A DNA stretch of 64,000 nt from Podarcis tiliguerta (GCA_965153285.1 OZ229122.1), one strand, 5' to 3'; counted from the first letter of the stretch, positions 10,072-50,947 are shown. Made by a program: numbers and translations. Notes: generated by a model not told the origin, from the sequence alone.

Positions 10072-10108
<37 letters not shown>

Positions 10109-11084: not shown

Positions 11085-11121
<37 letters not shown>

Positions 11122-14100: not shown

Positions 14101-15791
14101 AAACCTCTGTTGTGTGGAAAGCAGGTTCAGTGTGGCCTTATAAGTCATTCCTGCAGTGTAGTAGCTATTGAGGATGTGGAACCCGAGGGAAACATTTGAT
14201 AAAATGTTGAGATTCTCATTTATCTCTTTTACAGCAAATGCAAAAGCCATGACATGCTGGTAGTTCTTGGGCACTGAACTGCAATTAGAGTTACAGGCTC
14301 TTTAATCAAATAACAACAACAACAATAATAATTTGTTGAATTTATAATAATCATTTATTGGCATCATTTCAAAAGTTAAATGTAGCAAAAAAAAAAAATG
14401 CTGGGTAGGAACCAGAATTAGTCAGAATAGACCATTGACTTAATGAGCAAAACTAACATAGGATTTTTTTCATTTTAATGAGTCTGCTTTGAGTAGAACT
14501 CAGTAAATACTAACTACTCAGGAGAAGTGGTAGTCTACAGTATAATGAAATGAAGGGGGGCAAAAATTTGGGGACAATCTCATTGTTGATCAAACTGCCC
14601 CCTCCACTTATTTTTAGGAGCAGAATAGGAGTATTTTTTGCCTTCTCCATATACATTTATTTCATTTACTGCATTTATTATTGAAAATCTATTTAGCAGC
14701 AGGTTAAATCAAACATTAAATATACATAATAATAAGTAAGCAACAGATCAAGCAACTGATCTGGATCATTTATGATATCAGGGACCAGATATATTTTAAT
14801 TCAGTTGCAGTGCGTATACCCAAAGAAAGAAGAGAAGAAGAGGAGGAGTTTGGATTTGATATCCTGCCTTTCTCTCCCTTTAAGGAGTCTCAAAGCAGCT
14901 AACATTCTCCTTTCCCTTCCTCCCCCACAACAAACACTCTGTGAGGTGAGTGGGGCTGAGAGACTTCAGAGAAGTGTGACTAGCCCAAGGTCACCCAGCA
15001 GCTGCATGTGGAGGAGCGGAGACATGAACCCGGTTCCCCAGATTACGAGACTACTGCTCTTAACCACTACACCACGCTGGCTCTCAAGTGAAATGAGAAA
15101 GTGAAATGAGAAACAATCCTGCAGGTGGAAAGTACAAAGGAGAGCCTACAAGAATGAACTCACCTATATTTAAAATATCACCTATACTGACCCAGTTTGT
15201 TATGACTGAGGGCCAATTCCAAAATAATATTTTACAAACCATGTACCTGTACAATAATTTGCGTGCACACTTTTAAATTCAAAAAGTATGTGCAAGACCA
15301 TATTGTATTTCCAAACACAAATATCACAAACATACTCTCAATGGAGATTTAGATCCTTCACTAATTCTGAGTTTATCATTGTACAAGATGGGAATAGACT
15401 GGGCAGGCTACGCTCATACCAAAAACTAAATAATTTTACTTAAGCACAGTTTTACTTAATGATGCATTCTGAGTCACTATGGACTAAACATATTACAGGA
15501 AGAGAGAGAGAGAGAGAAAGGGAAAGAGAGAGAGAAGATGATGCTTTACATGGGTTCATTAATCAAGATCTTTGCAGGCTGTTCCATGAAAGAAAGGTTA
15601 TTATAGAGGAATAAGACCTGAGAAACAATCCCTCCAATGAGGAGGTCTCCTGGTTGATAAAATCCATGAGGAATCAGGAGACGATCATCAAACATGGTGC
15701 AATTAATCAGATTTGTCATGCATACACTTTGGCATAGGAGTACAAGTAGCAACATCAGCACCACCCAGATCCTGTTGAAAATGTTTTCCAT
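9114..15791 (-). CDS. V2R gene B, complete, ~877 aa; exons 15550-15791, 13987-14278, 12244-13086, 11702-11929, 11263-11389, 9114-10015
   Basis: Venus-flytrap exons 1-4, CRD ([11 protein letters not shown]) in exon 5, and a 7TM exon with TPIVKANN and [17 protein letters not shown]. Spliced length 2634 nt, in frame, no internal stops. Confidence 0.95.
10075..10107. repeat. (CA)n microsatellite (another at ~11087-11118)
   Basis: Read directly. Confidence 0.95.
13397..13578. mobile_element. hAT MITE, present in gene B intron 2 only
   Basis: TIRs cagggatgtccaaa / tttggacatgcctg; perfect 8-bp TSD catgtaac; empty site in gene C at ~26629. Confidence 0.9.
14825..15085 (-). mobile_element. tRNA-derived SINE (Squam3-like), gene B intron 1 only
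   Basis: Full-length copy; empty site in gene C at ~27615. Confidence 0.88.
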
Positions 15792-16194
15792 CCCAGCATA
15801 GATCTCTGTGTTTCCAACTACTGGATTTCTATCAACACGATTTATTGTGCAGCACAACATGTTGGTATTGTAAATTTTGTTACAGCCTCCCTTGAATGGT
15901 AATGATTCTGTTGGTACACACAGTTTTATAGCTGCAATTCTTAGATTAGCTCTGCACCAGTAACCTGGTAGCAAAGTTAATAATTGCTCCCTTTTCACAT
16001 GCCTAATTAATGAGGTCCAGTTTTTAACAGGAAGAAATGGACAAGTGGAAAATCATCAGCCAACAAAAAAGGGATGAGAAGCAGAGATACTCTAGAATAC
16101 ATTTTTTGAATTTTATTCTAAAAAAGTATAGTTGAATCAGCTGCTGGGATTATAGGTGGACATATGAAGTGGAAACAGTCACAGAAAAGATTAG

Positions 16195-16405
16195 CAAAGC
16201 TCTTCCTTTGCTAGGATTCAGTTGTGAACCATATGAAGATTATATAGCCTTTTCAGATGCTGATTGTTGATCTTGTTATTGGCCTCTGAAAATCTATTCT
16301 GTCAGAGGATGCAAAACAGTAATTTGAACAATGATGGGATGATGATCACTTCCCCAGAGTGCTATTGGCATTTGAAGTTACATAATATACCACAAAACTG
16401 CAAGG
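16195..16405 (-). promoter_or_regulatory. Conserved upstream element of gene B
   Basis: Homologous block; CAGATG at 16254-16259. Confidence 0.55.
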
Positions 16406-17203
16406 AATAGCCTCCTCCTAATCCTACAACTATTTTTCCTTATATTTTAGGAAGATTTAGAAATACATGGCACATGGCCTTATTGGTGCGGGTTGCTTCT
16501 GCCCAGAACTAAGTTCACACACTTGCCACTCAGATTTGGTATAAGTGTGTTTAATGCAGAGTTATAGCCTGGCAAATCTGAGGGTGGGTGTTTTCATGTA
16601 AAACAGTATATTATATGCTGTTTTGTTTTGTTTGTTAAATGTGTATATCACCCTTCATACATAGATCTCAAGGGGGTTCACAACATAAAATTTAAGATAA
16701 AAAACACAAAATAAATAATAAAAACAAGAAAAAGAACAGAAAAAATCAATTACCTCCTCTAGTTCGTTTAGCAGAACAATTGCAATTGTCTGTCACAGTT
16801 ATTGATATTAATATTATTTTGTCATTGAAAAAAAGAATTCATTCAAGCAGTAATAACAATGTGCAAGATACAGCAGACAAAATATCAGCTCCATGGAGCT
16901 TACAGCATATAAATTGACTGAGTATATGTATCTAGGAGCAAGGAACAGAGTAAGCAACTGGAGTTCTGGGCCCATGGAAAATTGTTTTCAAGGTCTGTGT
17001 GAAAGACAGTGGCCCTGGTGTGAAAGACAGTGGCCCTACTACGTTTTCAGGCAAAGTTCATTTCCAGCTACAATGGTAGCTAATGTGGAACACCCACCCA
17101 CCTTGCTAGTTATTAGATGCACCCCGTAATTCCTTTTAAGGAACATCGAGAGGAGAAGTGCTGGGATGAGCCACATCAGCACCATTTTCATTCTCCACAA
17201 TGC

Positions 17204-17820
17204 CATAACTTTCAAGATTCCTCAGATGAAAATAGGGACATTTCTCACTCCCCCAACTGATATTCTCCAATCTCCATTTTGTTTTCCCACTACAGAGCAG
17301 TTCCTATCAGAAGAAGGGTGAGGGCCGCCACCATTGCATCAACAGGACACAGCACACATGCCCTCCATCATACCAATAAATACTTTTCAAAAGGGGGCAA
17401 GATTAGACACACAAAGCATTTTTTAAAAGCAAGATTCCTTGTGGCCCACTCTGTTCCCTCTTTCTTCCTGCCCAGGGTGGCCCTTCCCTCTGTCTGCCCT
17501 ACAGAGCCAGTGCATCATATGGGTTTGGGCCTTGGTAGTGGCAGCCTCTCCTCCTCCTCACCCACTCTCCAGCAGCCGCTACAAACTGCCCAGGAGAGGA
17601 AGCCAGCAGCTGCGGCCATGGAGAGGCCATGGAAAGGCTACAGGGTGCTCCCTCACCTCCGCTGCCACTTGAGACAAGCACTGCCTCATTCTCTTTCCTG
17701 AGCTCAGCAGTGGCAGCACTGGTGGAGGAAATAGGGACATTCCAGGTTCAAATCAGAAGTCAGGGTGGCTTTCTTAATTCCAGGACTATGCCTGGAAAAT
17801 CTGGACACTTGGAGGGTATG
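17204..17820. mobile_element. Non-autonomous DNA-transposon-like element
   Basis: Imperfect TIRs cataactttcaag / cttggagggtatg, repeated aaatagggaca subterminal motif, caatgc on both flanks. Confidence 0.5.
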
Positions 17821-18338
17821 CAATGCCTCTTGACTCTGATTTAGCACCACAGAGGGATACTTCACAGGGACAGAACCTAAAAATAATGTAGAAAATCATA
17901 TAGTGCCTACAAGCCCTTACTTTTAAAATTAAAATAAAAAGATGCCAGCTGTGGTGGTTGAACTGGCTCTCGTCTCCTTTCCCTGCAAGGCCCATGTTTC
18001 CCATCAGAGATTATGGTGCAGAATTTCACAGCTTATCAACACTAGTGGGAACCGTCCCCCCCCCCACTAGTGCCGGTGTACTGGTAATGTCTTCACATTA
18101 CTAAGAATAGGAGAAGGCAGACAGAAGGAGTAGACCACCAAGCCCTTATCAGAATAAGGAATCTCTTATACTCTGCCTGAATCAATATAGGAAGTACCTT
18201 GAGGTGGGCTGTGGCCAGAGGTTTCTTCAGAAATTTTTGACAAAGGAAGCACTTGTACTGGAATTACAGATATACCTAACATAAGCATTTCCAAAGGACT
18301 ACATATATGAGCAGAAAGAAATGTATTTATTCTTCTTT

Positions 18339-21300
18339 TTATTTTCTTCTTCTTATTAATTGATCCCGGTTGTTCAGCTCAGGCCTGAGCAGAATGATGT
18401 AGCATTTAGGGAAGAAGATGCAGCCCAGTAACCCAGCACTCGAGGACAAGATGGAAAAGATCTCTACAGCCACCATATATTTCCCTTTGGTGCTTAGATA
18501 GGTTGGAACAAATGATAACCAAACAGTGCAAAACACCAACATGCTGAAAGTGATGAACTTGGCTTCATTGAAACTGTCGGGCAACTTCCTAGCCAGGAAA
18601 GCCACAACAAAGCTGACAATGGCCAGTGAGCCCATGTAGCCCAAGACACAGTAAAACATGAAAGCAGAACCATCATTACATTCCACTATGATTTCCCTAT
18701 CCAATGAGTACATGTCCATATCTGGGAAAGGAGGGGAGGTACTTAACCAAAGAGTACAAATGCCAACTTGAATCAAGGAAGAGGAAAGGACAATAGAATC
18801 TGCCATTCTTTTCCCCACCCATCTCCTCATTCCAGATCCTGGTTTGGTTGCCATGAAAGCCAGAACCACAGTGATGGTCTTTGCCAACACAGAAGAAAGG
18901 GCCACAGAGAATATGATACCAAAGGCTGTTTGTCGGAAAAGGCAGATGAGCTTTCCAGGATGTCCAATGAAGAGCAAGGAGCAGAGGAAGCAAAGGAGGA
19001 GGGAGATGAGGAGGATATAGGTGAGGGTTCGGTTGTTGGCTTTGACTATGGGAGTGTCCTTGTACTTCATAAAAATTCCAAGTACTAAACTTGTGATCAA
19101 ACAGAAAGAAATTGCCAATATAGTTAAGATGATCCCTAAATCTTCTTTGTAAGAGAGGTAGTTCACATCCTTTGGAATGCATTTAGTTTGTTCCTTGTTA
19201 GGACACTGTTCTTCTGGACAATTGACACAGGCATCGGCATCTTTAAAAAAAGGAAGATATATTTATCAGCTGTGAGGCACTTTCTATTTCTACATTTATA
19301 TGGCTGCTGAAAACTTGACTTATGTAGGCAAATAAAAATACATATTTCCACAATAGTTAGCTCTAGCTACTTCAACTAGCCAACTAGCCAACAGGATGAG
19401 GTAGCAGCATAGCTGGAGACAAAGGGTAGAAAACCACCTTGCTGCCAGGAGCCAGACACCAACTTTGTAGGTGGGATCAGAGGGAATCCACCTCTTGACA
19501 CACACATAATGGAGCACACATTCAGCAGAACTGACAAAAAGGGATTTCCATGAGTGAGCTTGCTCTGTCTCATCTTTAAAAGCTCTGTACAAGGGGCATT
19601 TCAACTCTTGGAGGATCTTCATAGCTTCTGTTTGGTTATGAACAACTTTCCTTGCTCATGCATCTTAAAAACTTGACCTATTTACCTTCTGCAGGCTGCT
19701 GAACCTGCACCGCTATTTGGTTGAATAAATATAGCTTTGTTAATTTCAAGTAAGAGTAGCTGTCATTGCATTTTGGGCCAGGGGTAATATAGGTTGGCAG
19801 TTGTTAACTGGGCATGTTCAAGATGGGCACATTTCCTTCTGCTTTGGATGATGGGATGGCTGGCAAACCAGCCAAAATCTTTCTATAATTTCAAGGAACA
19901 TATAATCTAAACAAGTAAATAGAAAGATGATGCATCACAGAACTTCCTTGATATTTCTGTTCATTATTTCTCCTACCCTTCTGGTGAGAGATCATCCCTT
20001 CTGGACATGGAGCACAATCATAGCAGCAAAATTTCTCTCCCTCCTTCTTTTTCCTGCTGTAGCCTGGGTAGCAGTTGTCATTGCAAATGGAAAGCGGCAG
20101 CACCTGTTCATATGCATGAAATACTATTAGTGATGTGTTTTGAGAACAGCAGGTCTGCAAAATATCTGAGGATGTGGACAAAATGTTTGGATCAGTCAGG
20201 ATAACCACTTGCACTGTAACCCGTTACTCCTCATGGCTTATAAATACTAGCAGAGAAGGGACAGCTGGCTGGGCTAGGGAAGTAATTAATGCCTCCTTCT
20301 GAGGGGCAATGGTTCCACCTTTTGAAGCCCTCCCTGAATTAGGAAAATCTAAGTAGTTGCACTGTGGGTTAAACCACTGAGCCTAGGAATGCTGATCAGA
20401 AGGTCGGTGGTTCGAATCCCCGCGACGGGGTGAGCTCCCATTGCTCGGTCCCTGCTCCTGCCAATCTAGCAGTTCGAAAGCACGTCAAAGTGCAAGTAGA
20501 TAAATAGGAACCGCTCCAGCGGGAAGGTAAACGGTGTTTCTGTGCGCTGCTCTGGTTCGCCAGAAGCGGCTTAGTCATGCTGGCCACATGACCTGGAAGC
20601 TGTCTGCGGAGAAACACCAGCTCCCTCGCCCCATAGAGCGAGATGAGCGCCGCAACCCCAGAGTTGGTCACGACTGGACCTAATGGTCAGGGGTACCTTT
20701 ACCTTTTAAGTAGTTACCGGCCAGTGGCCAATCTCCCCTTCTTGGGCAAGGTTCTTGAGTGGGTAGTTGTGGACCAGATCCAGGCAATCTGGGAGGAAAC
20801 TGATTTTCTAGATCCATTTCATTTGGGGTTTAGGCCCAGTTTTGGCACAAAAACTGCTCACTGGGGCAATATGGTTTGGGCATATTACATTGATCCTGGT
20901 CCGCCTGCACTGCCTGCCAATTTGTTTCCAGGCCCAATTCAAAGTGCTAGTTTTGACCTGCAAAACCTTAAATGACTCAAGATCTCAAGGACAACATCTT
21001 CCTATATGAACTGACCCAGACCCTGCAATCATCATTTGATGCGCTTCATTTGCTCCCTCCACAAGAGGTCCAGAGGGCAGCAACACAAGAATGGGCCTCT
21101 TTTGCTGTAGTTCCCCAGATCCCTCAAGTGTTCCAAGCTAACTGGGACAGCCATTGCTTCTGATTCCAATCCTGAATGCCCCAATTTTGCTCCCTGCACT
21201 GGCCACACCAGAGCAAGGGACCAAAAGGCGAGTACTTTTTTGGTTCTGCACTGTGACGTGAGTCAGTTGGCTCTTACTTGTAACCAAGCACTTATAGATG

Positions 21301-24300
21301 TTTCTCACCTGGTTAAAGCTTTGATGCCACACAATTTGATCATCATTGATAGCTAACTGTTTGCCTTGAGGTGCCTGAGGTTCCAGCCTGCCAACTTTCA
21401 CTCGAACCACAGAGCCATTGGGGAACATCAGCCAGTTTGTAATATCAAAACTTGTAACTAATTCGCCATTTTCATCAAAAGACACAGTATCTCCTTCATT
21501 GTTGTTGAATGCAATCCTCCTTAGAATGTGATGAACCTAAAATGAAAAGAATGTGAACAAAGAGACAGCAAAGTCTGGAAACCATTTCCAAGAAATAATA
21601 TATAATGAATTGAAAAGGATGTTTAAAATAACATTTGTAAAAAACTTAGAAGCTTTCCTTTTGGGAATTAAAGGGACAGAACTACCCAAACTGTACAGAA
21701 ATGTATTCATGGTATGCTACTACAGTGGCAAGAATGTTACTTGCTCCAAAACAGAAAGAAGTAGAAGTCCCAGCAAAGGAAGAATGAACAAAAACTTATG
21801 CATTATGCAGAAGTGGCAAAATTTACCGGAAAAATAGGAAATCAAGATAACAAACTTTTTATAAAAGGATGGAAATGGTTTATTGAATATTTACAGACAA
21901 ATTGTAAACAGAAAAGAACATTGGCAGGATTATCGTAATAACCTGCTGTTTCATAAGAATATATATTTAAAGTAGAGAGCCAGTGTGGTGTAGTGGTTAA
22001 GAGCGGTAGTCACGTAATCTGGGTAACCGGGTTCGCGTCTCCGCTCCTCCACATGCAGCTGCTGGGTGACCTTGGGCCAGTCACAGTCTCTCAGCCCCAC
22101 TCACCTCACAGAGTGTTTGTTGTGGGGGAGGAAGGGAAAGGAGAATGTTAGCCGCTTTGAGACTCCTTAAAGGGAGTGAAAGGCGGGATATCAAATCCAA
22201 ACTCTTCTTCTTCTTCTATCGTAATAACCTGCTGTTTCATAAGAATATATATTTAAAGTAGAAGAATAAATGAACTAATTAAGTTAATTTGGATATGTAG
22301 AAGTTAATAAAAATAAATTTAAGGACCCAAAGAAAGTGGGGGAAGGAAGTCAAGTCTGAAATGTTAAAATGACTGCAAAATTACTGAAATGTTTAAACCT
22401 GAAAATCATAAATAAAAATAATTTTTAAAAAACATTTCCAAGAACTACCCAAAGAGTTGTCAAACTCTTTTTGGGATAATGTATTTGATGGCATATTTCT
22501 AGCTATCATCATTATCATAATCTTTCGCCTTTTCCCCTGACAGGGCTCCATACACATGCGTAGTGATGAATTAAAATAATGAATAAATCACTATTTCACA
22601 TTGGGGTTAGAAGGAATTATCCAAATAGATTGACAGAAAGAAAAATGAGGAGAACTTACCTTTACTTATGCATCATAATCTTAACTGTATTGTTCTTTAA
22701 ACTGCAATTACCTGCCATGGTTGCACATCCTGAAATTTCAGACTCCCTCTGAAGCTTCGATGTTGGGAACTGATTTTATTTAAAGCATGTGCCACAGCAT
22801 AGACAGCATTGTAGACATTGTAGCTGTGACCAGTCATCTTCCCTTCAAACAAAATTCCAGAAAGGCTTTCCAGTTTCTCTTCTCCAGTGCATGCTTTCTT
22901 TCTCTCTCCTAGTCCATTGTACACTTTTAATGAACAGCTGAATGCCTGTTCCCAGAAGTCCTGGACAAAACCATCTCCTTTAACCCAGAAAGGTCTAATC
23001 GTCTGAATAAACTTTTGGAATCCTTGGGGCTGTTTTGAGTGAACTGTGAATGACATGGCACCATGGAAGGTTTGTATATCCCATATCTTCTGAACAGACA
23101 GTGATGCAAAATCCCAGTGGGATGTAGTAATCCATACTTTACAAAGAGGTGGAAATGACAAGAAAGGTGCTAGAAACAGTAATACTCTCAAAATCTGAAA
23201 AGATGGTGGTTCTCCATATACAAATAATGCACTCGCTTTTTTGTCACTGACGATTACATAACTTACCCAGTGCTTTATCATCAAGTCAATCAACTCATCA
23301 AAATATGCCCGTTTTGGTATTCTATCTATGAAGGCAGAACAGATGCCATTCTGAGAAAGCATTGGCACCATAGTCTGTAAAAACTGGTCCCCTTTGTCAT
23401 CAGCCACAGCCAAGAGCCCAACCCATGTCCATCTGAAATGCTGAAGTAACAGAACAACTCCCATGTGCTGATGAGCTTCATTTGGAACCATCTGGTATAA
23501 AAATGGGAATTGCATTCTGATACTTTTTACAGGCAAAAATGATCCATAAGTAAGCTGAAATGAAATATATTATCAATCTTTATTACGTTCCAGAGACCCA
23601 GCAAATCATTACAAAGCAATACATAATTCAGACAGCCTACCACCAGGTTAAACAAGCATTTTGTTCAGACTTAAAGATAGGGATGATTGGTTCTTGCAAC
23701 CACCAATAAAAACTTCACCACTGCTAATGTTCTAGTGTTTGTCCAGTCTTCCAATAGGAACCTGACATAGTGAGCCTCTGATTTTCCCAAGAAAGGTACT
23801 AGCAACGGTAATATCAGCACAGCCCTGGCTTGCTTGTATTTCACACAGTGCAGCAAAATATGTTTTATAGAACTGATGTCTTGAGCACATGAGCAAAGTC
23901 TGTCCTGGTAGGGAACTCCTCTCAGCCTGCCATCCAACACTGCAGAAGGAAAGATGTTTAGTCTGGTTTTGGTGAATAACCTTCGCTAATTTGGTACTGT
24001 CAGGTTTTTAATGTAAGGTAACTTAGAGACTGCTGGAGGAGACTCTTGAGAGTCCCATGGACTGCAAGAAGATCAAACGTATCCATTCTTAAGGAAATTA
24101 GCCCTGAGTGCTCACTGGAAGGACAGATCGTAAGCTGAGGCTCCAATACTTTGGCCACCTCATGAGAAGAGAAGACTCCCTGGAAAAGACCCTGATGTTG
24201 GGAAAGATTGAGGGCACAAGGAGAAGGGGACGACAGAGGATGAGATGGTTGGACAGTGTTCTCGAAGCTACAAACATGAGTCTGACCAAACTGCGGGAGA

Positions 24301-27300
24301 CAGTGGAAGACAGGAGTGCCTGGCGTGCTCTGGTCCATAGGGTCACGAAGAGTCGGACACGACTAAATGACTAAACAACAACAACTTAAAGACATGCCCA
24401 TATTGTATTCCTACTGTCAACGGACTACAGATTCTGTGTGATCAGGATTGCAAGTCACTATGTGTATTATCCCATAATCTTTGCTTTAACGTCTTTAGGG
24501 CGCCTTCATAAACCAGGTAATAGAGTTGGGGGGGGGGTGACAGACCAATAGAGGTTTTTTAGCCATGGTTTTCTGCCAATTGCTGACAAACTCCTCCTTG
24601 GTCAGGTGTTGATACAGACCCTCCCCTAGATCAAACACTACAATCCTGAGCCAATGTTTTAGGCTAGCCCACCATGCCTTAGTTGAAATTGGGCATTCAC
24701 CAGCTTCTAACAGAAGTGGGTAAAAGCCTCAGCACCTAGGGCTTGCCAATCGAAAGGTCGGCGGTTCGAATCCCCGCGGTGGGGTGCGCTCCCGTTGTTC
24801 GGTCCCAGCGCCTGCCAACCTAGCAGTTCGAAAGCACTCCCGGGTGCAAGTAGATAAATAGGGACCGCTTACTAGCGGGAAGGTAAATGGCGTTTCCGTG
24901 TGCGGCTCTGGCTTGCCAGAGCAGCGATGTCACGCTGGCCACGTGACCCGGAAGTGTCTCTGGACAGCGCTGGCCCCCGGCCTCTTGAGTGAGATGGGCG
25001 CACAACCCTAGAGTCTGTCAAGACTGGCCCGTACGGGCAGGGGTACCTTTACCTTTACCTTAACAGAAGTATGGAGTTGGAGACACAGTTGGGTACCTGC
25101 AGCAGAGATCGTAGAAATTTTGCCTGAAAGCCGCCTAGCTTAGGCATGTTCCTATTATGCCAGACATTTGCAGCGTACAGGAGTTGGAAAATGGATTTTG
25201 CATTGAAAACCCTTAAGGCTGCTGGGACATACTTGCTGCCCTTTGTGAAAAAGAATCTGAGTACAGTGGTACCTCTGATACAGATGCTTCAGGTTACAGA
25301 TTCCGCTAACCCAGAAATAGTACCTCAGATTAAGAACTTTGCTTCAGGGTGAGAACAGAAATCGTGCAGCGGTGGGGCAGCAGCAGCAGCAGGCCCCATT
25401 AGATAAAGTGGTGCTTCAGGTTAAGAACGGACCTCCAGAACGAATTAAGTTCTTAACCCGAGGTACCACTGTATGGGTAGCTTTGTGATCTCCACCTTTT
25501 GAAGGGAGATTTGCCAGTGGTGCTTCCAAGCTCTTGTATGATAGAAAGTGAACCCTAGATAACTGAAGTATTTAATCGGTTGAAGGTTATGGCCATCCAG
25601 CACCCATTTAAATCAGGAGAAGCTTCTTTTGAATACTAAAATTTTTGATTTTTCATAATTAATGGATATGCCATTTCCAAAACAGTAATCGGAAAACTTT
25701 CTCAGCAGATATTTCAAACCCGGTCTGGAATGTGAAATGATGGCCTCATCATCTGCATATAACAACAAAGGCGTCCTTCTCATTCCTGTTTTTAGAAGGT
25801 GTCCGTCTGAGTCCATTAGGCTCGCTTCTAGGTCATTTAAGAATAGGCAAAACAATGTGGGGACCAGAATGCATCCCTGTGTCCCCCCCCCCCAGTCATC
25901 TCGCTACTGTTCGATAACTGTCCCTGCCGACCGCATAGGACCTGCAGTTTGGTTCCATTGTACAGGGCTTTTATAAGAAAGAGGAATCGTTTGTCCTGCA
26001 ATATCAGGTTTAATTTTGACCATAGCTGGGATCTGGGCATGGACCTGAACGCTGATTTCAGATCCATGAAGCCACGAAGAGTTTACCCTGTAGAGGCCTG
26101 GTAGAGGCTAGGGAGGACAACATTAGACAGTGGTCTGATGTTGAATGGTTCTCACGAAAGGCTGCCTGGGCTTCAGATAGTATATAGTGTTCATTTAGAA
26201 AAGTTGTCAGTTTGCTACTGAGGAAACCATACAACTTCCCAACTATTGAAAGCAGGCTAATTGGCCTATAATTGGAGGATACGTTTGGGTGGCCTCTCTT
26301 AAAGTTTGGGACTACTATAGCATGATTCCAGCTATATGGTACTTTGCCTGAGTTATGTACTAGGATAGATTTCAAAAGAATGGTAACTCATAGAATGAAA
26401 GTTTTTCATGTGGCTCTGCTTATAGTCTTATATCCTGCAGGAAATTTAGAATTAAAGCATCCACAGCAGGTGGCTGTCCTACCTTTACCTGAAGACAAGA
26501 ATTTTAATAATTGTCTCATTTTGGGTATTATATTCTGTGAGTTTTGCAATATGATAACAATACTGACTTTAGAATACTTTAGTTTTGTCACACCTCCAAA
26601 ATGTAGAACCTAGCTGGTATGAGATCTTCATGTAACAGTTATATTGAAATAAACTATGGATAAATTTGAGTTCATATGGTGTCAAATAACAGACACATTG
26701 TTTTATAGCCCCCTCCTCAGTTTGTTGCATCAAGGAATTTGTCCACATGCAAACAACACCATATTTTCTTGTCTAACCAACACTAGCTGGAAGGAAACCT
26801 CTGTTCCATCCAACACCCCTCTCCAAGCATGGCAAATTGGGGATTTAAATTGCTCTGGCCACTATCACTCCCTGTTTTCTGTTATCTGCCTATTAGTGCT
26901 TCCCTGTTTCATCTACATTATTGGTGAGAATGTGCTAAATAATTGCTAAATAAAATATCACAAGAAGTTTTCTCATCTGATTTACAGAAATCAAGACAAT
27001 GCACACAGTTGTGGAATCTCCATACTCTCATGCATACAACTTACCTGTGGAATTTTGTGGATTGCAGAAATAATGGCTACGTTGGCAGAGATCTCAGAGA
27101 TACATCCTCCAATGAGAGCTATCAGCTTGCTTTGGTGGTGACACTTGAAGTTGGGGACAAACCTCTGTTGTGTGGAAAGCAGGTTCAGTGTGGCCTTATA
27201 AGTCATTCCTGCAGTGTAGTAGCTATTGAGGATGTGAAACCCCAGGGAAACATTTGATAAAATGTTGAGATTCTCATTTATCTCTTTTACAGCAAATGCG

Positions 27301-28322
27301 AAAGCCATGATATGCTGGTAGTTCTTAGGCACTGAACTGTAATTAGAGTTACAGGCTCTTTAATCAAATAACAACAACAACAATAATAATTTGTTGAATT
27401 TATAATATTCATTTATCGACATCATTTCAAAAGTTAAATGTAGTATAAAACTGCCGAGGAGGAACCAAAATTAATCATAATAGACCCATTGTATTAATAG
27501 GCACAACTCACATTAAATCTACATAATAATAAGTAAATCAGGCAATTTACTTGGATCATTTATGATATCAGGGATCAGATATATTTTAATTCAGTTGAAG
27601 TGCATATACCCAAAGGAAGTGAAATGAGAAAAGATATCGCAAGTGGAAAGTACAAAGGAGAGCCTACAAGCTTCCATGAATTCACCTATTTTTAAAATAT
27701 AATCTATACAGACCCAGCATAGGGCCAATTACAAAATAATATTTTTAAAAGCATGTACCTGTACAATAATTTGTGTGCACACTTTCAAATTCAAATAGTA
27801 TGTGCAAGACCATATTGTATTTCCAAACACAAATAACACAAACATATTCTCAACAGAGATCTAGATCATTCACTAATTCTGAGCTTATCCTTGTATAAAA
27901 TGGGAATAGCCTTGGCAAGATACACTCACACTAAAAACTAATTGATTTTACTTTAGCACAATTTTTCTTAATGTTGCATTCTGAGTCACTATGGGCTCAG
28001 GAAGAGCCTATATTACAGGCAGAGAGATAAAGAAAGGGGCAGAGGAGAGAAAGAGAGAGAGAAAAAAGATGATGCTTTACATGGGTTCATTAATCAAGAT
28101 TTTTGCAGGCTGTTCCATGAAAGAAAGGTTATTGTAGAGGAATAAGACCTGAGAAACAATCCCTCCAATGAGGAGGTCTCCTGGTTGATAAAATCCATGA
28201 GGAATCAGGAGATGATCATCAAACATGGTGCAATTAATCAAATTTGTCAAGCATGCACTATGGCATAGGAGTACAAGTAGCAACATCACCGTCACCCAGA
28301 TCCTGCTGAAAATGTTTTCCAT
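18339..28322 (-). CDS. V2R gene C, complete, ~877 aa, chimeric (B-like exons 1-4, D-like exon 5 3' part and exon 6); exons 28081-28322, 27045-27336, 22712-23554, 21309-21536, 19977-20103, 18339-19240
   Basis: Same V2R motifs; spliced length 2634 nt in frame. The exon 6 acceptor is TTAAAG (AAG). Confidence 0.93.
20359..20706 (+). mobile_element. Sauria SINE
   Basis: tRNA-like head (ggttcgaatccc), (ACCTTT)n tail, 9-bp TSD taagtagtt. Confidence 0.9.
20707..21140 (+). mobile_element. L2/CR1-group LINE RT fragment
   Basis: [15 protein letters not shown]...[10 protein letters not shown]...T.TA motif. Confidence 0.75.
21595..22432 (+). mobile_element. L1/Tx1-clade LINE 3' fragment (gene C intron 3 only) with a nested SINE
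   Basis: EAFLLGI ORF2 C-terminal remnant, A-rich tail, TSD catttccaagaa (21583-21594 / 22433-22444). Confidence 0.8.
21975..22216 (+). mobile_element. tRNA-derived SINE (Squam3-like) with a 44-bp TSD
   Basis: gagagccagtgtggtgtagtggttaagagc...(ctt)n; identical 44-bp flanks at 21931-21974 and 22217-22260. Confidence 0.9.
24031..24382 (+). mobile_element. Bov-B (RTE) LINE 3' fragment
   Basis: [37 protein letters not shown], (CAA)n tail, 11-bp TSD aactta(g/a)agac. Confidence 0.92.
24718..25060 (+). mobile_element. Sauria SINE
   Basis: (ACCTTT)n tail; 10-bp TSD taacagaagt. Confidence 0.9.
25264..25471. mobile_element. Tc1/mariner-type MITE
   Basis: TIRs cagtggtacct / aggtaccactg with TA TSD; same family as 12-253. 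Confidence 0.88.
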
Positions 28323-28724
28323 CCCAGCATAGATCTCTGTGTTTCCAACTACTGGATTTCTATCAACACGATTTATTGTGCAGCGCAACGTGTTGGTATT
28401 GTAAATTTTGTTACAGCCTCCCTTGAATAGTAGATGATTCTGTTGGTACGCACAGTTTTATAGCTGTAATTCTTAGATTATCTCTGCACGAGTAACCTAG
28501 TAGCAAAGCTAATAATTGCTCCCTTTTCACATGCCTAATTAATGAGGTCCAGTTTTTCACAGGAAGAAATGGAAAAGTGGAAAATCATGTGCTGACGAAA
28601 AAGGGATGAGAAACAGAGATACTCTAGAATACATTTTTTGAATTTTATTCTAAAAATTATAGTTGAATCAGCTCCTGGGGTTATACGTTGACATATGAAG
28701 TGGAAACAGTAACACAAAAGATTA

Positions 28725-28909
28725 GCAAAGCTCTTCCTGTGCTAGGCTTCAGTTGTGAACCATATGAAGATTATATAGCCTTTTTAGATGCTGATTGTTG
28801 ATCTTGTTATTGGCCTCCGAAAATCTATTCTGTCAGAGGATGCAAAACAGTAATTTGAACAATGATGGGATGATGATCACTTCCCCAGAGTGCTATTGGC
28901 ATTTGAAGT
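28725..28909 (-). promoter_or_regulatory. Conserved upstream element of gene C, interrupted at 28910 by an LTR-like insertion
   Basis: Near-identical to the B copy; the E-box is mutated to TAGATG at 28785-28790. Confidence 0.5.
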
Positions 28910-29716
28910 TGTGATTCAAAGACCTGCCACCTGCTTGGGGATAAGAAAGACACATGGACACAGTATATTAGGTTAATGGGCTAAAAAAGGCCACAACTTT
29001 ATTGATTACAGCATGTGAGAGGTATTGTCTTAGGCATTGGATAAAACAACAGAGTGTGACTCCACCCTCTCGGGGGGGGGGGGGTGTGTGTGAGTCTAAC
29101 AAGGGTTAACCACAAGTGGGAGCAGCCTGTTGATGCAAATACAACTGAAATCTCCTCCTGATGTCACTGGGGGTTGTGCCATGGCCCTAGCCACCAGCAA
29201 GGGCGTCGGACAGGATCCACGACCGCCGGATTCCTTTACCGGAATAACCATAAAGTGGAGGGGGAGGCAATGGCCACACCCAGCCCTCCAGTACACATAC
29301 ATATTCCATTGCCTAACCACCAATACCTAAAAGTTGTGACAATTTGCTACGAGGTAGGCAAAAAACCAAGTGGCTGGTGCCAATTTGCGAGTTGGATAAA
29401 AATTCCTACCAGGCCCCTTGGGCAACCAAGGTGACCAACCACAGGTCCGTAGCAATGTCAAGAACCAAGCAATGAACTAAAGGGAGGGTGGGTGGGTGAT
29501 CCAACAAAAACCAGCAGCAGAATGAAAAGGAAGTGCTGCTGTGGCCGCATTTGAGCAGCTAAACCCCACCCCCAAGCCTCCACCTGATTGCTTGGCTACC
29601 TGGGGGTGTGGCGCAGCAGACAGGCCAGCTGGGGAGGGGCTGGAACGCCCCCTGCCAACACGGGAAATGGCTCCTGCTCACAACTCCTCCCCTCTGTAAG
29701 GAGGAGAGGCTTTACA
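28910..29716 (-). mobile_element. Solo-LTR-like insertion upstream of gene C
   Basis: Minus-strand termini TGTAA...CACA, AATAAA at 28998-29003, absent from the B copy; no clean TSD. Confidence 0.65.
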
Positions 29717-30504
29717 TCATATACCACAAAACTGCAAGGAAGTGCCTCCTCCCAATTCTGCAACTATTTTTCTTTATCTTTTAGGGAGATTTAGAAATAC
29801 ATGGCCTTATTGGAGCAGGATGCTACTGCTTAGAATTGAGTTCACACAACATCCATTCAGATTTGGTATAAGTGTGTTTCAATAGTGAGTTATAGCCTGG
29901 CAAGTCTGAGAGTGAGTGTTTTCATGTAAAAAGTATATTATATATTGTTTTGTTTTGTTTATTAAATGTGTATTTCACCCCTCATATGTAGATCTAAAGA
30001 TGGTTCGCAACATAAAATTTAAGATCAAAAACACGAAATACATAATAAAAACAAGTAAAAGAAGAAAACAAATCAATAACTTCCTCCACTTCCTTTAGCA
30101 GAACAAATGCAATTATTGTCTGCCACAGTTATTGATATTAATATTATTTTGTCATTGTTAAAAAGAATTTATTAATGCAGTAATAACATTGTGCAAGATA
30201 CAGCAGATTAAATCGCAGCCCCATGGAGCTTACAGCATATAAATTGACTGAGTATATGTATCTAGGAGCAAGGAACAGAATAGGCAACAGGAGTTCTGGG
30301 CCCAGGAGGTCTGTGTAACTCCATGGTGTGAATGGCAGTGGTCCTACTAAGGTTTTTTGGAAGGTTCATTTCCAGCTACAATGGTAGCTGATGTGGGAGA
30401 CCCACCAACCTTGCTAGTTATTAGAGGAATTACAAATACACCTAACATAAGCATTTCCAAGGGAATACATATATGAACAAAAAGATATGTATTTCTTCTT
30501 CTTT

Positions 30505-33500
30505 TTATTTTCTTCTTATTAATTGATCCCGGTTGTTCAGCTCAGGCCTGAGCAGAATGATGTAGCATTTAGGGAAGAAGATGCAGCCCAGTAACCCAGC
30601 ACTCGAGGACAAGATGGAAAAGACCTCTACAGCCACCATATATTTCCCTTTGGTGCTTAGATAGGTTGGAACAAAGGATAACCAAACAGTGCAAAACACC
30701 AACATGCTGAAAGTGATGAACTTGGCTTCATTGAAACTGTCTGGCAACTTCCTAGCCAGGAAAGCCACAACAAAGCTGACAATGGCCAGTGAGCCCATGT
30801 AGCCCAAGACACAGTAAAACATGAAAGCAGAACCATCATTACATTCCACTATGATTTCCCTATCCAATGAGTACATGTCCATATCTGGGAAAGGAGGGGA
30901 GGTACTTAACCAAAAAGTACAAATGCCAACTTGAATCAAGGAAGAGGAAAGGACAATAGAATCTGCCATTCTTTTCCCCACCCATCTCCTCATTCCAGAT
31001 CCTGGTTTGGTTGCCATGAAAGCCAGAACCACAGTGATGGTCTTTGCCAACACAGAAGAAAGGGCCACAGAGAATATGATACCAAAGGCTGTTTGTCGGA
31101 AAAGGCAGATGAGCTTTCCAGGATGTCCAATGAAGAGCAAGGAGCAGAGGAAGCAAAGGAGGAGGGAGATGAGGAGGATGTAGGTGAGGGTTCGGTTGTT
31201 GGCTTTGACTATGGGAGTGTCCTTGTACTTCATAAAAATTCCAAGTACTAAACTTGTGATCAAGCAGAAAGAAATTGCCAATATAGTTAAGATGATCCCT
31301 AAATCTTCTTTGTAAGAGAGGTAGTTCACATCCTTTGGAATGCATTTAGTTTGTTCCTTGTTAGGACACTGTTCTTCTGGACAATTGACACAGTCATCGG
31401 CATCTTTAAAAAAGGAAGATATAGTTAACAGCTGTGAGGCACTTTCTATTTCTACATTTATATGGCTGCTGAAAACGTGACTTATGCAGGCAAATAAAAA
31501 TACATATTCCCACAATAGTTAGCTCTAGCTACTTCAACTAGCCAACTAGCCAACAGGATGAGGTGGCAGCATAGCTGGAGACAAAGGGTAGAAAACCACC
31601 TTTATGCCAGGAGCCAGACACCAGCTTTGTAGGTGGGATCAGAAGGAATCCACCGCTTGACACACACCTAATGGAGCACACATTCAGCAGAACTGACAAA
31701 AAGGGATTTCCATGAGTGAGCTTGCTCTGTCTCATCTTTAAAAGCTCTGTACAAGGGGCATTTCAACTCTTGGGGATCATCATAGCTTCTGTTTGGTTAT
31801 GAACAACTTTCCTTGCTCATGCATCTTAAAAACTTGACCTATTTACCTTCTGTGGGCTGCTGAACCTGCACCGCTATTTGGTTGAATAAATATAGCTTTG
31901 TTAATTTCAATTAAGAGTAGCTGTCATTGCATTTTGGGGCAGGGGTAATATAGGTTGGCAGTTGTTAACTGGGCATGTTCAAGATAGGCACATTTCCTTC
32001 TGCTTTTGATGATGGGATGGCTGGCAAACCAGCTAAAATCTTTTTTATAATTTCAAGGAACATATAATCTAAACAAGTAAATAAAAAGATAATGCATCTC
32101 AGAACTTCCTTGATATTTCTGTTCATTATTTCTCCTACCCTTCTGGTGAGAGATCATCCCTTCTGGACACGGAGCACAATCATAGCAGCAAAATTTCTCT
32201 CCCTCCTTCTTTTTTTTGCTGTAGCCTGGGTAGCAGTTGTCATTGCACACAGAAACAGGCAGCACCTTTAAAGAAGCATGAAGGATGATTTACACTAAGA
32301 GAGTGGGTCTTGAAAATAGCTCATCTCTTGGCATGAAAGTATGACTGAGAGAAGACAGTGAATTTTGCCTTCACCAAGCTCAGATTGGAACATTAAACAT
32401 TGTCATAAAGCTCAGGCAAAGTTTATCACCTCCATAATCGTTTTCAAAATTATTGATCATGGCTTACGTGAAAGCATTTATTCACAAAACAGGAAGTGAT
32501 GTTGTTGAGGAGGCAGGGTTCTTTACTATATATATAAAAAAATCTACTGGGAGCTCACTTGGAGTGATGTGACATTTAAGGGGTATGTGATTTATTTTAT
32601 AATAATTTTAATCAGCATTGTTCAGAGCCTGAAAACCAGATAGAAATATGAACTGGCCAAAAATAAGAAATTTCTCATTTGATTATTTAAATATTTTTTG
32701 CTATGTCTCACCTGATTAAAACTTTTATGCCAGACAATTTGCTCATCATTAAGGGTTAATTCTTTGCCTGAAGGAGCCTGAGGTTGGAGTCTTCCAACTT
32801 TCACTCTAACCAGTGAGCCATTGGGGAATGTCACCCAGTTTGTAACATCAAAACCTGTAACTAATTCACCATTGTCATCAAAGCGCACAGTGTCTCCAGC
32901 ACTGTTATTGAATGTGATCCACCTTAGAAAGTGATGCACCTAGATTGAAAGAGAATATGAACGACTAGGTATTGAGATTATTAGAATGAGACCAAGGTTA
33001 GATTAAAAAACTTTTTGAGATTCTGCACAGCCATGTTACTTTGGATGTAAGAAAGGGACTGCTAAATTGGTCCAACTGTTTGGGCGAAGTTAACCCTGCA
33101 GATTCCTATTTGTTGGAAAAATGAATCTTTGCATAATCAAAGAGGTGGTCAAATATAGGTGTTATGTTGCCACAAAAATAAATACGGTAGTTGTAGTTGA
33201 TGTCATCAATGTGTTGCAGTCTTGAAATTGGACCTGACTTGCTATCTGTAAGAAAGGTAAAAACCCAAGGTACAAACATGCCCTGTGACTCCTGAAATAT
33301 CTTATTTCTGACCACATGTAACATTTATTCCATGAGCTTCAGAAAAGTCTGTTCTAACAAAGTTCTATTTCTAACAAAGAATTATCTAACAAAGAATTCA
33401 TTCGCCTCCACTTTTGGGACTTTATACTTCCACCTATCTCTCCTGTCCATTTAGCTTCATGTCCATGGCCCATTATAAATAATAAATTACTATTTCATAA

Positions 33501-46982: not shown

Positions 46983-47026
<44 letters not shown>

Positions 47027-50814: not shown

Positions 50815-50931
50815 GGAGCAGAATGAAGTGGGCATAATAAATTCAGTCTCACAGTTCTTCAGCTAGGCCCAACACAATGATGTAGCATAAAGAGGGAATG
50901 GTGCAACCCAGAAAAACAAAATATGAGGATG
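50815..50931 (-). pseudogene. Decayed duplicate of the TM7/C-tail/post-stop end of exon 6 in the 3' flank of F
   Basis: Translates FLGCTIPSLCYIIVLGLAEEL, versus [16 protein letters not shown] in intact genes; ggagcagaatgaag is also repeated from the post-stop sequence. Confidence 0.7.
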
Positions 50932-50947
50932 TAATAAAATATAGGTG

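What the first reader, a model, noticed from the sequence alone, without database searches (positions are those of the whole stretch)
18339..28322. Gene C is a domain-swap chimeric receptor: B's ligand-binding domain fused to D's CRD/7TM, with the crossover mapped to ~8 nt
Seen: C's exons 1-4, introns 1-4 and upstream flank match B (identical 242-nt ex1 and 843-nt ex3, shared intron sequence). Its intron 5, exon 6 and 3' flank match D ([18 protein letters not shown] acceptor, shared intron 5). Within exon 5 most diagnostic sites are D-like up to 20077 (NDN codon) and B-like from 20086 (gaaagcggcagcacctgttca), so the switch lies at ~20078-20085. The transcriptional order D, B5'/D3', B is what one unequal crossover between exon 5 of tandem D and B would produce. 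Established: in class C GPCRs the Venus-flytrap domain binds ligand and the 7TM couples to G protein. Inference: the highly conserved exon 5 acts as a recombination hinge that generates new in-frame VFT/7TM combinations, a modular route to V2R diversification.
Basis: partly seen in the sequence, partly recalled or inferred. Interest (0 to 1): 0.85.

Follow-up and report, generated by a model that had tools for sequence, protein, structure and literature searches.

The report
Hybrid vomeronasal receptor from unequal crossover
One gene in a tandem array of vomeronasal type-2 receptor genes is an intact hybrid that carries its left neighbour's ligand-binding half and its right neighbour's membrane half, as a textbook unequal crossover would make, so it is a clean but not surprising example of how such arrays grow.

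Summary
The window carries seven six-exon V2R genes on the minus strand, called A to G here. Gene C (18339-28322) has intact exons and splice sites.

- **Two parents.** Exons 1-4, introns 1-4 and 2.1 kb upstream match gene B: exons 95.5-97.4 %, (B,C) clade 100 % in each exon tree. The 3' flank, exon 6 and intron 5 match gene D: exon 6 99.2 %, (C,D) clade 100 %.
- **Switch point.** Of 495 informative sites, the best breakpoint lies between 20077 and 20086 in exon 5 (0 of 2000 permutations), inside the cysteine-rich domain.
- **Origin.** The order B, C, D, the polarity of the hybrid, and a base-exact shared junction between B-type upstream DNA and D-type 3' flank (30425|30426) show one tandem duplication of about 8.7 kb. 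Its new joint lies in exon 5. This is an unequal-crossover hybrid of the anti-Lepore type, not a conversion patch.
- **New here.** The two halves differ in age. B-C introns and the C-D 3' flank differ by 10-11 %, C-D intron 5 by only 3 %. C and D were probably homogenised later, so the 8-nt interval may mark the end of a conversion tract.
- **Not shown.** The idea of exon 5 as a recombination hinge rests on one event. A second discordant pair (F/G) has its boundary at the 5' end of exon 6. Reads could not bridge the joint.

The parts
18339..28322 (-). Gene C, the hybrid V2R: six exons, ATG at 28322, stop at 18339-18341, exon lengths summing to 2634 nt
   Evidence: Exon boundaries, internal AG/GT sites and open frames. 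Pfam by exon.
28081..28322 (-). C exon 1 (242 nt, signal peptide and start of the Venus-flytrap domain), B-like at 95.5 %
   Evidence: (B,C) clade 100 %.
27045..27336 (-). C exon 2 (292 nt, ANF_receptor), B-like at 97.3 %
22712..23554 (-). C exon 3 (843 nt, ANF_receptor), B-like at 97.0 %; the 843-nt length is shared only with B
21309..21536 (-). C exon 4 (228 nt), B-like at 97.4 %
19977..20103 (-). C exon 5 (127 nt, NCD3G cysteine-rich domain), mosaic: B-like at 20086-20103, D-like at 19977-20077
20078..20085 (-). Present boundary between B-type and D-type ancestry; corresponds to B 11364-11371 and D 32240-32247
   Evidence: Maximum chi-square breakpoint, 0 of 2000 permutations; alignment.
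18339..19240 (-). C exon 6 (902 nt, end of the cysteine-rich domain plus 7tm_3), D-like at 99.2 %
18260..20077 (-). D-like block of C (3' flank, exon 6, intron 5, most of exon 5), matching D 30426-32239
20086..30425 (-). B-like block of C (start of exon 5, introns 4-1, exons 4-1, 2.1 kb upstream), colinear with B 11372-17117 apart from insertions
11372..20085 (.). Copy 1 of the tandem repeat unit (8714 bp): B from exon 5 to its upstream region, then the D-type 3' part that now belongs to C
   Evidence: Offsets between the exon 5 copies; colinear matches.
20086..32247 (.). Copy 2 of the tandem repeat unit (12162 bp, enlarged by insertions): the B-type part of C, then the 3' part of D
30413..30438 (.). 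Intergenic junction 30425|30426, where B-type upstream DNA runs directly into D-type 3' flank. The same two sequences flank the insert in copy 1.
17118..18259 (.). 1142-bp segment present only in copy 1, either an insertion there or a deletion in copy 2. It has no homolog elsewhere in the window, including B's 3' flank.
9114..15791 (-). Gene B, parent of the ligand-binding half
30505..38339 (-). Gene D, parent of the cysteine-rich-domain and 7TM half
23581..26360 (.). 2.78-kb insertion specific to C in intron 2, carrying a reverse-transcriptase fragment. It is one of several copy-specific insertions that show the duplication is not recent.

Best explanation
Gene C is a real, intact hybrid V2R. 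It was created when an about 8.7-kb unit was duplicated in tandem by unequal (non-allelic homologous) crossover between exon 5 of two neighbouring paralogs, B and D.

The unit ran from exon 5 of B, through B's 5' exons, promoter and the intergenic DNA, to exon 6, intron 5 and exon 5 of D. Its single new joint fell in frame inside exon 5, the first part of the cysteine-rich domain. The new middle gene therefore has B's promoter and Venus-flytrap ligand-binding domain, and D's cysteine-rich domain and seven-transmembrane domain.

Shown here:
- the mosaic structure;
- the position of the ancestry boundary;
- the tandem-unit geometry, with the shared intergenic junction;
- open frames and dN/dS below 1.

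Inferred:
- The event was homologous crossover rather than some other kind of duplication.
- After the duplication (about 10-11 % non-coding divergence), C and D were homogenised by gene conversion across exon 6, intron 5 and exon 5 (about 3 % divergence). I put this step at about 0.7.
- The protein should bind B-like ligands and signal or traffic like D. This follows from the established modularity of class C GPCRs and is not tested here.
For: - Mosaic. Identities and per-exon trees put C with B in exons 1-4 and with D in exon 6, each at 100 % support. Of the informative sites, 308 of 330 are B-like 5' of the boundary and 159 of 165 are D-like 3' of it.
- Geometry. The hybrid lies between its parents in the same orientation. 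Its polarity is the right-hand gene's left part plus the left-hand gene's right part, as expected for the duplication product of a crossover.
- Shared junction. In copy 2 the sequence ...GCTAGTTATTAGA|GGAATTACA... is contiguous at 30425|30426. In copy 1 the same two flanks are separated only by the 1142-bp segment 17118-18259. B-type upstream DNA and D-type 3' flank were therefore copied together as one piece.
- C's 3' region has no homology to B's 3' flank, so C was never a whole copy of B.
- B-type homology runs for 10 kb including 2.1 kb upstream. That is far longer than a conversion tract.
- The gene is kept in shape. All six exons are open. B-C dN/dS is 0.36 (29 non-synonymous and 21 synonymous differences, against 3.7:1 expected under neutrality) and C-D dN/dS is 0.22. 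C's branch is shorter than B's in exons 2, 3 and 4.
- Domains by exon: ANF_receptor, NCD3G, 7tm_3.
- Later homogenisation. C-D intron 5 differs at 21 of 690 sites, B-C introns 1, 3 and 4 at 112 of 1055 (p = 1e-9). The C-D 3' flank differs at 8 of 76 sites. That equals the B-C introns (p = 1.0) and differs from intron 5 (p = 0.005).
Against: - The two halves of the repeat unit do not have equal divergence, as one clean event would predict. A second event has to be added.
- B-C non-coding divergence is itself patchy: 5-6 % in intron 2 and the near upstream region, 10-12 % elsewhere.
- Exon 5 offers little homology for classical crossover. It is 127 nt long and B and D are now 90.6 % identical there, and the boundary sits in an 8-nt interval between mismatches.
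- No read or contig from the window's own species was shown to bridge the joint. Exon 5 k-mers are shared by a large gene family (depth above 3000), so the contigs break there.
- No RNA evidence exists for a spliced C transcript.
Confidence: 0.8

Rival explanations
1. Conversion only. C began as a complete tandem copy of B, or of D, and its other half was later overwritten by ectopic gene conversion from the other neighbour. No crossover took place in exon 5.
For: Gene conversion is documented in the V2R/OlfC family (PMC6588630). The C-D block is clearly younger than the B-C block. Conversion is needed in my model as well.
Against: - C's 3' region (17118-18259) shows no homology to B's 3' flank.
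- The D-like block ends exactly where D's own 3' flank meets B-type upstream DNA (30425|30426). For a conversion tract that would be a coincidence.
- The 79-nt 3' flank carries the old divergence, not the young one.
- If C began as a copy of D, the converted tract would have to be 10 kb long and include the promoter and intergenic DNA.
Confidence: 0.08
2. Assembly artefact. The assembler jumped between two real paralogs at the conserved exon 5, collapsing a longer array into a false hybrid.
For: Exon 5 k-mers are extremely repetitive in this genome (depth above 3000). None of the contigs listed from the two runs of the window's species bridges 20008-20102.
Against: - C differs from both parents (B 3-11 %, D 1-3 %), so it is not a join of B's and D's own sequences.
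- A collapse across 127 nt of about 90 % identity is not how long-read assemblies fail.
- The window has no gaps.
- Both flanks of the joint are covered at single-copy depth in two independent runs of the species. A 360-nt contig of a related species covers 20039-20345.
- The tandem unit is colinear and internally consistent.
Confidence: 0.04
3. Exon 5 is a preferred recombination hinge that repeatedly re-assorts Venus-flytrap and 7TM modules across V2R clusters. On this reading C is one instance of a general modular mechanism.
For: Exon 5 is the most conserved exon among the independent paralogs, at 86.4 % mean identity. It has the same length and phase in all genes and lies at the boundary between the domains. 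A second pair in the window, F/G, also shows exon 6 related differently from exon 5.
Against: - Only one event maps to exon 5.
- The F/G boundary is at the 5' end of exon 6.
- The longest identical run between B and D is 29 nt in exon 5, against 58 nt in exon 6 and 36 nt in exon 2.
- Older discordance among B, D, E and F cannot be shown: delta lnL is at most 3.4 in exons 1-4.
- Survival of in-frame, foldable hybrids would by itself enrich for joints at domain borders, without any hotspot.
Confidence: 0.2
4. One event only. A single crossover made C, and the threefold lower C-D divergence reflects local rate variation or constraint on intron 5, with no later conversion.
For: B-C non-coding divergence also varies about twofold between segments. 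The old-looking C-D 3' flank is only 76 aligned sites.
Against: Intron 5 versus the B-C introns gives p = 1e-9. Synonymous divergence tells the same story, 0.020 against 0.065. The adjacent 3' flank differs from intron 5 at p = 0.005. No reason is known why a 736-nt intron should be constrained threefold.
Confidence: 0.15

Closest known systems
Anti-Lepore-type hybrid genes (duplication products of unequal crossover between tandem paralogs, such as haemoglobin anti-Lepore and red/green opsin hybrids; from my own knowledge, textbook)
   Same: - Two tandem paralogs in the same orientation.
- A crossover within a homologous exon.
- A three-gene product with the hybrid in the middle.
- The hybrid takes its promoter and 5' part from one parent and its 3' part from the other, in frame.
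   Different: Here the parents are only about 80 % identical overall, and the homology used is a single 127-nt exon. The event is old (about 10 % non-coding divergence) and apparently fixed. It was followed by partial homogenisation with one parent.
Gene conversion and concerted evolution in V2R/OlfC arrays (GENECONV events in catfish OlfC subfamily 9, PMC6588630; raised as untested for squamate V2Rs in PMC3590772)
   Same: Sequence exchange between neighbouring V2R paralogs makes gene trees disagree along the gene. The young C-D block and the F/G exon 6 block here look like such events.
   Different: The origin of C is a duplication with a new joint, not a patch. The B-type homology includes the promoter and intergenic DNA and continues into the D-type 3' flank.
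Engineered class C GPCR chimeras (Venus-flytrap domain of one receptor on the 7TM of another, e.g. mGluR/CaSR and T1R swaps; from my own knowledge, not checked here)
   Same: The same domain logic applies: the ligand-binding module of one receptor sits on the cysteine-rich and 7TM module of another, joined near the cysteine-rich domain.
   Different: C is a natural gene kept open by selection. Its joint lies eight codons inside the cysteine-rich-domain exon rather than at a designed border. Its ligand and coupling are unknown.
Tetrapod-type V2R genes of squamates (large lineage-specific expansions by tandem duplication; PMC3590772, PMC9018814)
   Same: Six-exon class C GPCR genes in a head-to-tail array, with ANF_receptor, NCD3G and 7tm_3 domains.
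   Different: The V2R phylogenies I read use the 7TM region only (PMC9018814, PMC3590772). A gene like C would be filed there as a sister of D, and its B-type ligand-binding half would go unnoticed.

Membership tests
V2R (vomeronasal type-2 receptor, class C GPCR) | N-terminal Venus-flytrap ligand-binding domain (Pfam ANF_receptor) | tested here: met
   Exon 3 E = 4.6e-21 and exon 2 E = 2.8e-7, both above the gathering score.
V2R (vomeronasal type-2 receptor, class C GPCR) | Nine-cysteine domain (NCD3G) between the Venus-flytrap domain and the 7TM | tested here: met
   Exon 5 E = 9.9e-15, 54.6 bits against a cut-off of 38.9.
V2R (vomeronasal type-2 receptor, class C GPCR) | Class C seven-transmembrane domain (7tm_3) | tested here: met
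   Exon 6 E = 1.4e-85, covering the full length of the profile, 1-251 of 251.
V2R (vomeronasal type-2 receptor, class C GPCR) | Intact six-exon gene with consensus splice sites, in a tandem array of paralogs | tested here: met
   Internal exon boundaries are AG/GT, there are no internal stops, and the exon lengths sum to a multiple of 3. Seven paralogs lie head to tail.
V2R (vomeronasal type-2 receptor, class C GPCR) | Expression in vomeronasal sensory neurons | not testable with these tools
   No listed run that holds the stretch is RNA. Reads were laid on DNA contigs.
Unequal-crossover (NAHR) duplication hybrid, anti-Lepore type | The hybrid lies between its two parents in the same orientation, and is made of the right-hand parent's left part plus the left-hand parent's right part | tested here: met
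   The order on the plus strand is B, C, D. C's low-coordinate part is D-like and its high-coordinate part is B-like.
Unequal-crossover (NAHR) duplication hybrid, anti-Lepore type | Two colinear copies of one unit that includes the intergenic DNA between the parents, with the intergenic junction preserved in both copies | tested here: met
   Copy 2 is contiguous at 30425|30426. Copy 1 has the same flanks around the 1142-bp segment 17118-18259. The unit lengths of 8714 and 12162 bp equal the offsets between the exon 5 copies.
Unequal-crossover (NAHR) duplication hybrid, anti-Lepore type | The joint lies within paralogous homology and preserves the reading frame | tested here: met
   The boundary at 20078-20085 lies inside exon 5, which has the same length and phase in all genes.
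Unequal-crossover (NAHR) duplication hybrid, anti-Lepore type | Equal neutral divergence between the two copies along the whole unit (single event, no later exchange) | tested here: not met
   C-D intron 5 is 3.0 % diverged, against 10-11 % for B-C introns 1, 3 and 4 and 10.5 % for the C-D 3' flank. A later C/D conversion is needed. This lowers the claim of one clean event, not the claim of a crossover origin.
Unequal-crossover (NAHR) duplication hybrid, anti-Lepore type | An ancestral two-gene (B, D) arrangement in an outgroup or as a segregating haplotype | tested here: inconclusive
   A run of one related species has no contig on C's intron 4 or 3' flank at 95 % likeness or more, and only one contig per place on intron 5. 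A run of another related species has a contig on 20039-20345. The contigs are too short to decide.
Ectopic gene conversion patch | A donor-like tract of limited length, flanked on both sides by the recipient's own sequence | tested here: not met
   For the origin of C, the B-like sequence runs 10 kb to the unit's end. The D-like sequence runs to the shared intergenic junction, and no B-type 3' flank remains. The feature may well be met for the younger C-D block at about 18340-20077.

The most novel reading that the evidence does not exclude
Re-assortment of ligand-binding and 7TM modules is a recurrent way in which squamate V2R arrays diversify, with joints enriched at the cysteine-rich-domain exons (exon 5 and the start of exon 6). 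The C hybrid and the F/G exon 6 exchange would be two instances in one 64-kb window. If so, the usual 7TM-only V2R phylogenies would systematically misassign the ligand-binding relationships of many receptors.
Probability: 0.2. Interest if true: 0.6.

Novelty: new member of a known kind. Interest (0 to 1): 0.4.

Why it matters
The mechanism, a hybrid gene made by unequal crossover in a tandem array, is textbook. Tandem duplication is already taken as the main driver of V2R expansion (PMC9018814). The finding does not open a new question.

It is still useful in three ways.

1. It is a fully resolved natural domain swap in a class C chemoreceptor, with both parents next to it. That makes a ready three-gene set for testing whether ligand specificity follows the Venus-flytrap half, and whether trafficking, coupling or co-receptor use follows the 7TM half.
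2. It warns that V2R trees built on the 7TM region alone (PMC9018814, PMC3590772) would place this receptor with D, although its ligand-binding domain is B's sister.
3. The different ages of the two halves show that duplication and later conversion act together in this array. This complicates dating V2R expansions from any single exon.

In the searches I ran I found no paper that describes a V2R hybrid with an exon 5 joint. Subscription journals are mostly outside the library searched.

Tried and rejected
- **Reads.** The one read-laying run used Logan contigs of four DNA runs. The contigs are 100-600 nt long and break at exon 5, where k-mer depth exceeds 3000. The joint could therefore be neither confirmed nor refuted in the window's own species. 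Only a 360-nt contig of a related species covers 20039-20345, 39 nt on the D-like side, and its alleles at the diagnostic sites were not listed. No RNA run holds the stretch.
- **C as a whole copy of B, later converted.** Rejected. The segment 17118-18259 has no match to B's 3' flank, even at word size 7.
- **C as the original gene, with B and D as the hybrids.** Considered because E groups weakly with B/C in exons 3 and 4 and with C/D in exon 6. Rejected on geometry: a two-copy tandem repeat has only one new joint, and it lies in C. The quartet likelihoods are also not significant.
- **Older discordance among B, D, E and F.** Unresolved. Delta lnL is at most 3.4 in exons 1-4, against 7.4 in exon 6.
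- **Target-site duplication around the 1142-bp segment.** None found, so insertion in copy 1 and deletion in copy 2 stay equally possible.
- **tRNA and Rfam scans to type the SINE-like repeats.** Nothing found.
- **Earlier notes of this scan.** No other V2R hybrid has been noted in this genome.
- All protein-level work went exon by exon, by reference, so no full-length homology search, structure prediction or look-up of an annotated protein was done. Large protein-database searches were not used: an exon-sized query cannot retrieve full-length V2Rs under the length rule, and the public contig collections on offer hold no vertebrate genomes.


Full report
**What is in the window**

A self-comparison, a six-frame scan and paralog alignments show a head-to-tail array of seven class C GPCR genes on the minus strand.

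| Gene | Extent in the window |
|---|---|
| A | exons 1-4 only, 400-5398 |
| B | 9114-15791 |
| C | 18339-28322 |
| D | 30505-38339 |
| E | 41427-48219 |
| F | 51065-57626 |
| G | exons 5-6 only, 61109-63490 |

- Each gene has the same six-exon plan. In C the exon lengths are 242, 292, 843, 228, 127 and 902 nt.
- All internal exon boundaries are AG/GT and every exon is open in its phase.
- Pfam, run exon by exon, gives ANF_receptor for exons 2 and 3, NCD3G for exon 5 and a full-length 7tm_3 for exon 6. These are V2R genes.
- Other unchecked notes of this scan call the genome a lizard's. That fits the SINE-like repeats seen here, but I did not verify it.
- The window has no N runs.
Frames were checked from exon lengths and per-exon translations only.

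**Checking the observation**

C is 95.5, 97.3, 97.0 and 97.4 % identical to B in exons 1-4, and only 71-85 % identical to D there. In exon 6 it is 99.2 % identical to D and 82.7 % to B.

Maximum-likelihood trees for each exon give (B,C) at 100 % support in exons 1, 2, 3 and 4, and (C,D) at 100 % in exon 6.

Outside the exons, C's introns 1-4 and 2.1 kb of upstream DNA align colinearly with B, broken only by copy-specific insertions. C's intron 5 and 79 nt of 3' flank align with D. Neither B's intron 5 nor D's introns 1-4 can be aligned with C.

Across the exons there are 495 sites where B and D differ and C matches one of them.
- The maximum chi-square breakpoint falls between 20086 and 20077 (0 of 2000 permutations). 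308 of 330 sites are B-like on the 5' side and 159 of 165 are D-like on the 3' side.
- With those error rates, moving the boundary by one informative site is 14- to 26-fold less likely. The interval 20078-20085 is therefore well supported as the present ancestry boundary.
- Two sites below it are B-like, at 20054 and 20008. At 20054 D alone differs from all the other paralogs, so it is most simply a later change in D.
- These two sites, together with the C-unique change at 20053, give about 3 % divergence in the D-like part of exon 5. That matches the C-D background.

**How C arose**

Four facts point to one tandem duplication whose new joint lies in exon 5.

1. The hybrid sits between its parents in the same orientation.
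2. Its polarity, D's low-coordinate part plus B's high-coordinate part, is that of the duplication product of a crossover between misaligned B and D.
3. The decisive fact is the shared intergenic junction. The end of the B-type upstream homology (17117 in copy 1, 30425 in copy 2) abuts the start of the D-type 3' flank homology (18260 in copy 1, 30426 in copy 2).
   - In copy 2 the two are contiguous to the base.
   - In copy 1 they are separated only by a 1142-bp segment found nowhere else in the window.
   - B's upstream DNA and D's 3' flank were therefore copied as one piece.
   - The unit is 8714 bp in copy 1 (11372-20085) and 12162 bp in copy 2 (20086-32247). These lengths equal the offsets between the exon 5 copies.
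4. C's 3' region has no trace of B's 3' flank.

A model in which C began as a whole copy of B and was later converted by D fails on point 4. It also needs a conversion tract that happens to end exactly at 30426. The opposite model needs a 10-kb conversion tract that includes the promoter. An unequal crossover of the anti-Lepore type explains all four facts.

**Two ages**

One clean event predicts equal neutral divergence along the unit. That is not what is seen.

| Comparison | Region | Differences | Divergence |
|---|---|---|---|
| B-C | intron 4 | 22/214 | 10.3 % |
| B-C | intron 3 | 27/265 | 10.2 % |
| B-C | intron 1 | 63/576 | 10.9 % |
| B-C | far upstream | 76/610 | 12.5 % |
| B-C | intron 2 | 37/620 | 6.0 % |
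| B-C | near upstream | 26/545 | 4.8 % |
| B-C | exons 1-4, synonymous | | dS 0.065 |
| C-D | intron 5 | 21/690 | 3.0 % |
| C-D | exon 6, synonymous | | dS 0.020 |
| C-D | 3' flank | 8/76 | 10.5 % |

- Intron 5 differs from the B-C introns at p = 1e-9.
- Intron 5 differs from its own neighbouring 3' flank at p = 0.005.
- The 3' flank is indistinguishable from the B-C introns (p = 1.0).

The simplest reading has two steps. The duplication is old, at about 10-11 % non-coding divergence. This fits the several copy-specific insertions, including a 2.78-kb retroelement with a reverse-transcriptase fragment in C's intron 2. Later, C and D were homogenised by gene conversion over nearly their whole shared block, about 18340-20077. 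B and C may have exchanged shorter patches too.

One consequence follows. The 8-nt interval is the present boundary of D-type ancestry. The data cannot tell which.

**Is C a working gene?**

All exons are open. B-C differences in exons 1-4 are 29 non-synonymous to 21 synonymous, where 3.7:1 is expected under neutrality (dN/dS 0.36). C-D dN/dS in exon 6 is 0.22. C's branch is shorter than B's in exons 2, 3 and 4. C has therefore been under purifying selection for most of its existence.

Expression could not be tested. No RNA run holds the stretch.

**Reads**

The single read-laying run used Logan contigs of two runs of the window's species and one run each of two related species.
- Both flanks of the joint are covered at single-copy depth in both runs of the species.
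- Exon 5 k-mers are shared by a very large family (summed depth above 3000), and no listed contig bridges 20008-20102 in that species.
- A 360-nt contig of one related species covers 20039-20345.
- The run of the other related species has nothing on C's intron 4 or 3' flank at 95 % likeness or more.

This neither proves nor disproves the joint. I rate an assembly artefact as unlikely for three reasons: C differs from both parents, the window has no gaps, and a 127-nt exon of about 90 % identity is a poor substrate for collapse.

In the run closest to the assembly, all four differences from C's intron 5 are the D-type allele. That could mean young, still-polymorphic substitutions in C, or continuing exchange with D.

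**The hinge idea**

Exon 5 is the most conserved exon among the independent paralogs B, D, E and F, at 86.4 % mean identity against 72.9-83.7 % for the others. But it is short, and its longest identical run between B and D is 29 nt, against 58 nt in exon 6 and 36 nt in exon 2.

Only one event maps to exon 5. The window holds a second discordant pair. F and G are 93-94 % identical in exon 6 and about 79 % in the 3' flank. They have no alignable intron 5 and only 82.7 % identity in exon 5. That boundary lies at the 5' end of exon 6.

Both events separate the 7TM exon from the Venus-flytrap exons, which is suggestive of modular exchange. Two cases with different boundaries do not establish a hotspot, though. 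Selection for foldable in-frame hybrids would by itself favour joints at the domain border. Older discordance among B, D, E and F is not resolvable.

**Comparison with what is known**

- Hybrid genes from unequal crossover in tandem arrays are textbook (my own knowledge).
- Gene conversion among OlfC/V2R paralogs has been reported (PMC6588630). It was raised as untested for squamate V2Rs (PMC3590772).
- Tandem duplication is taken as the main driver of V2R expansion (PMC9018814).
- I found no paper describing a V2R hybrid joined in exon 5.
- The V2R phylogenies I read are built on the 7TM region only (PMC9018814, PMC3590772), so they would miss this kind of gene.

**Verdict**

- The origin by unequal crossover is well supported (0.8).
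- A later C/D conversion is a new and probable addition (about 0.7).
- The general hinge claim is unproven (about 0.2).
- The finding is a new member of a known kind, of moderate interest (0.4).

Noticed in passing
window 51035-51979 versus 61079-62022; flanks 50270-50935 versus 60196-61038: Genes F and G are 93-94 % identical in exon 6 (dS 0.20) and about 79 % in the 3' flank. They have no alignable intron 5 and only 82.7 % identity in exon 5. This is a second, older exchange or duplication boundary, at the 5' end of exon 6.
   Followed up: partly
window 23221-23271 (C exon 3; B equivalent about 12753-12803): Eight of the 25 B-C differences in exon 3 fall within 51 nt, and the encoded peptide changes at seven positions in this stretch (RREN to HWVS, I to V, VN to AS). 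At several of these sites C shares its state with E or F. The cluster could be a micro-conversion or local positive selection in the Venus-flytrap domain.
   Followed up: partly
window 17118-18259: A 1142-bp GC-rich segment is present only in copy 1 of the repeat unit. It has no target-site duplication and no homolog in the window. It starts 8 nt in with GTAATTCC, the reverse complement of the GGAATTAC that follows its right end. Whether it is an insertion, or a deletion in copy 2, is unresolved.
   Followed up: partly
window 20088-20089: A dinucleotide change unique to C (TG to CA on the coding strand, V to I) lies 3 nt from the ancestry boundary. Gene G has the same CA at this position.
   Followed up: no
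window 7985-8230, 14843-15085, 21972-22208 (inverted); also 20356-20706, 24716-25056, 49851-50201: Two families of short interspersed repeats, about 245 nt (92-94 % identical) and about 350 nt (78-92 % identical), are inserted at different places in B and C. They therefore arrived after the duplication. ARAGORN and Rfam do not recognise them.
   Followed up: partly
window 28323-28908 and 23555-27044 (aligned parts): B-C divergence is only 4.8 % in the first 600 nt upstream of exon 1 and 6.0 % in intron 2, against 10-12 % in the other non-coding parts (p = 6e-6). The cause could be a conserved promoter element (compare note s1-824268) or further B/C conversion patches.
   Followed up: no
window 19325, 19403, 19506, 19778 (C intron 5): In the public run closest to the assembly, the contigs on C's intron 5 differ from the window at four sites, and all four carry the D-type allele. 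The sites that distinguish C from D are thus partly polymorphic in the species, or C and D are still exchanging.
   Followed up: no
window 41421-41430 (3' end of E exon 6): Gene E has no stop codon at the position where B, C, D, F and G end. Its reading frame runs a few codons further.
   Followed up: no
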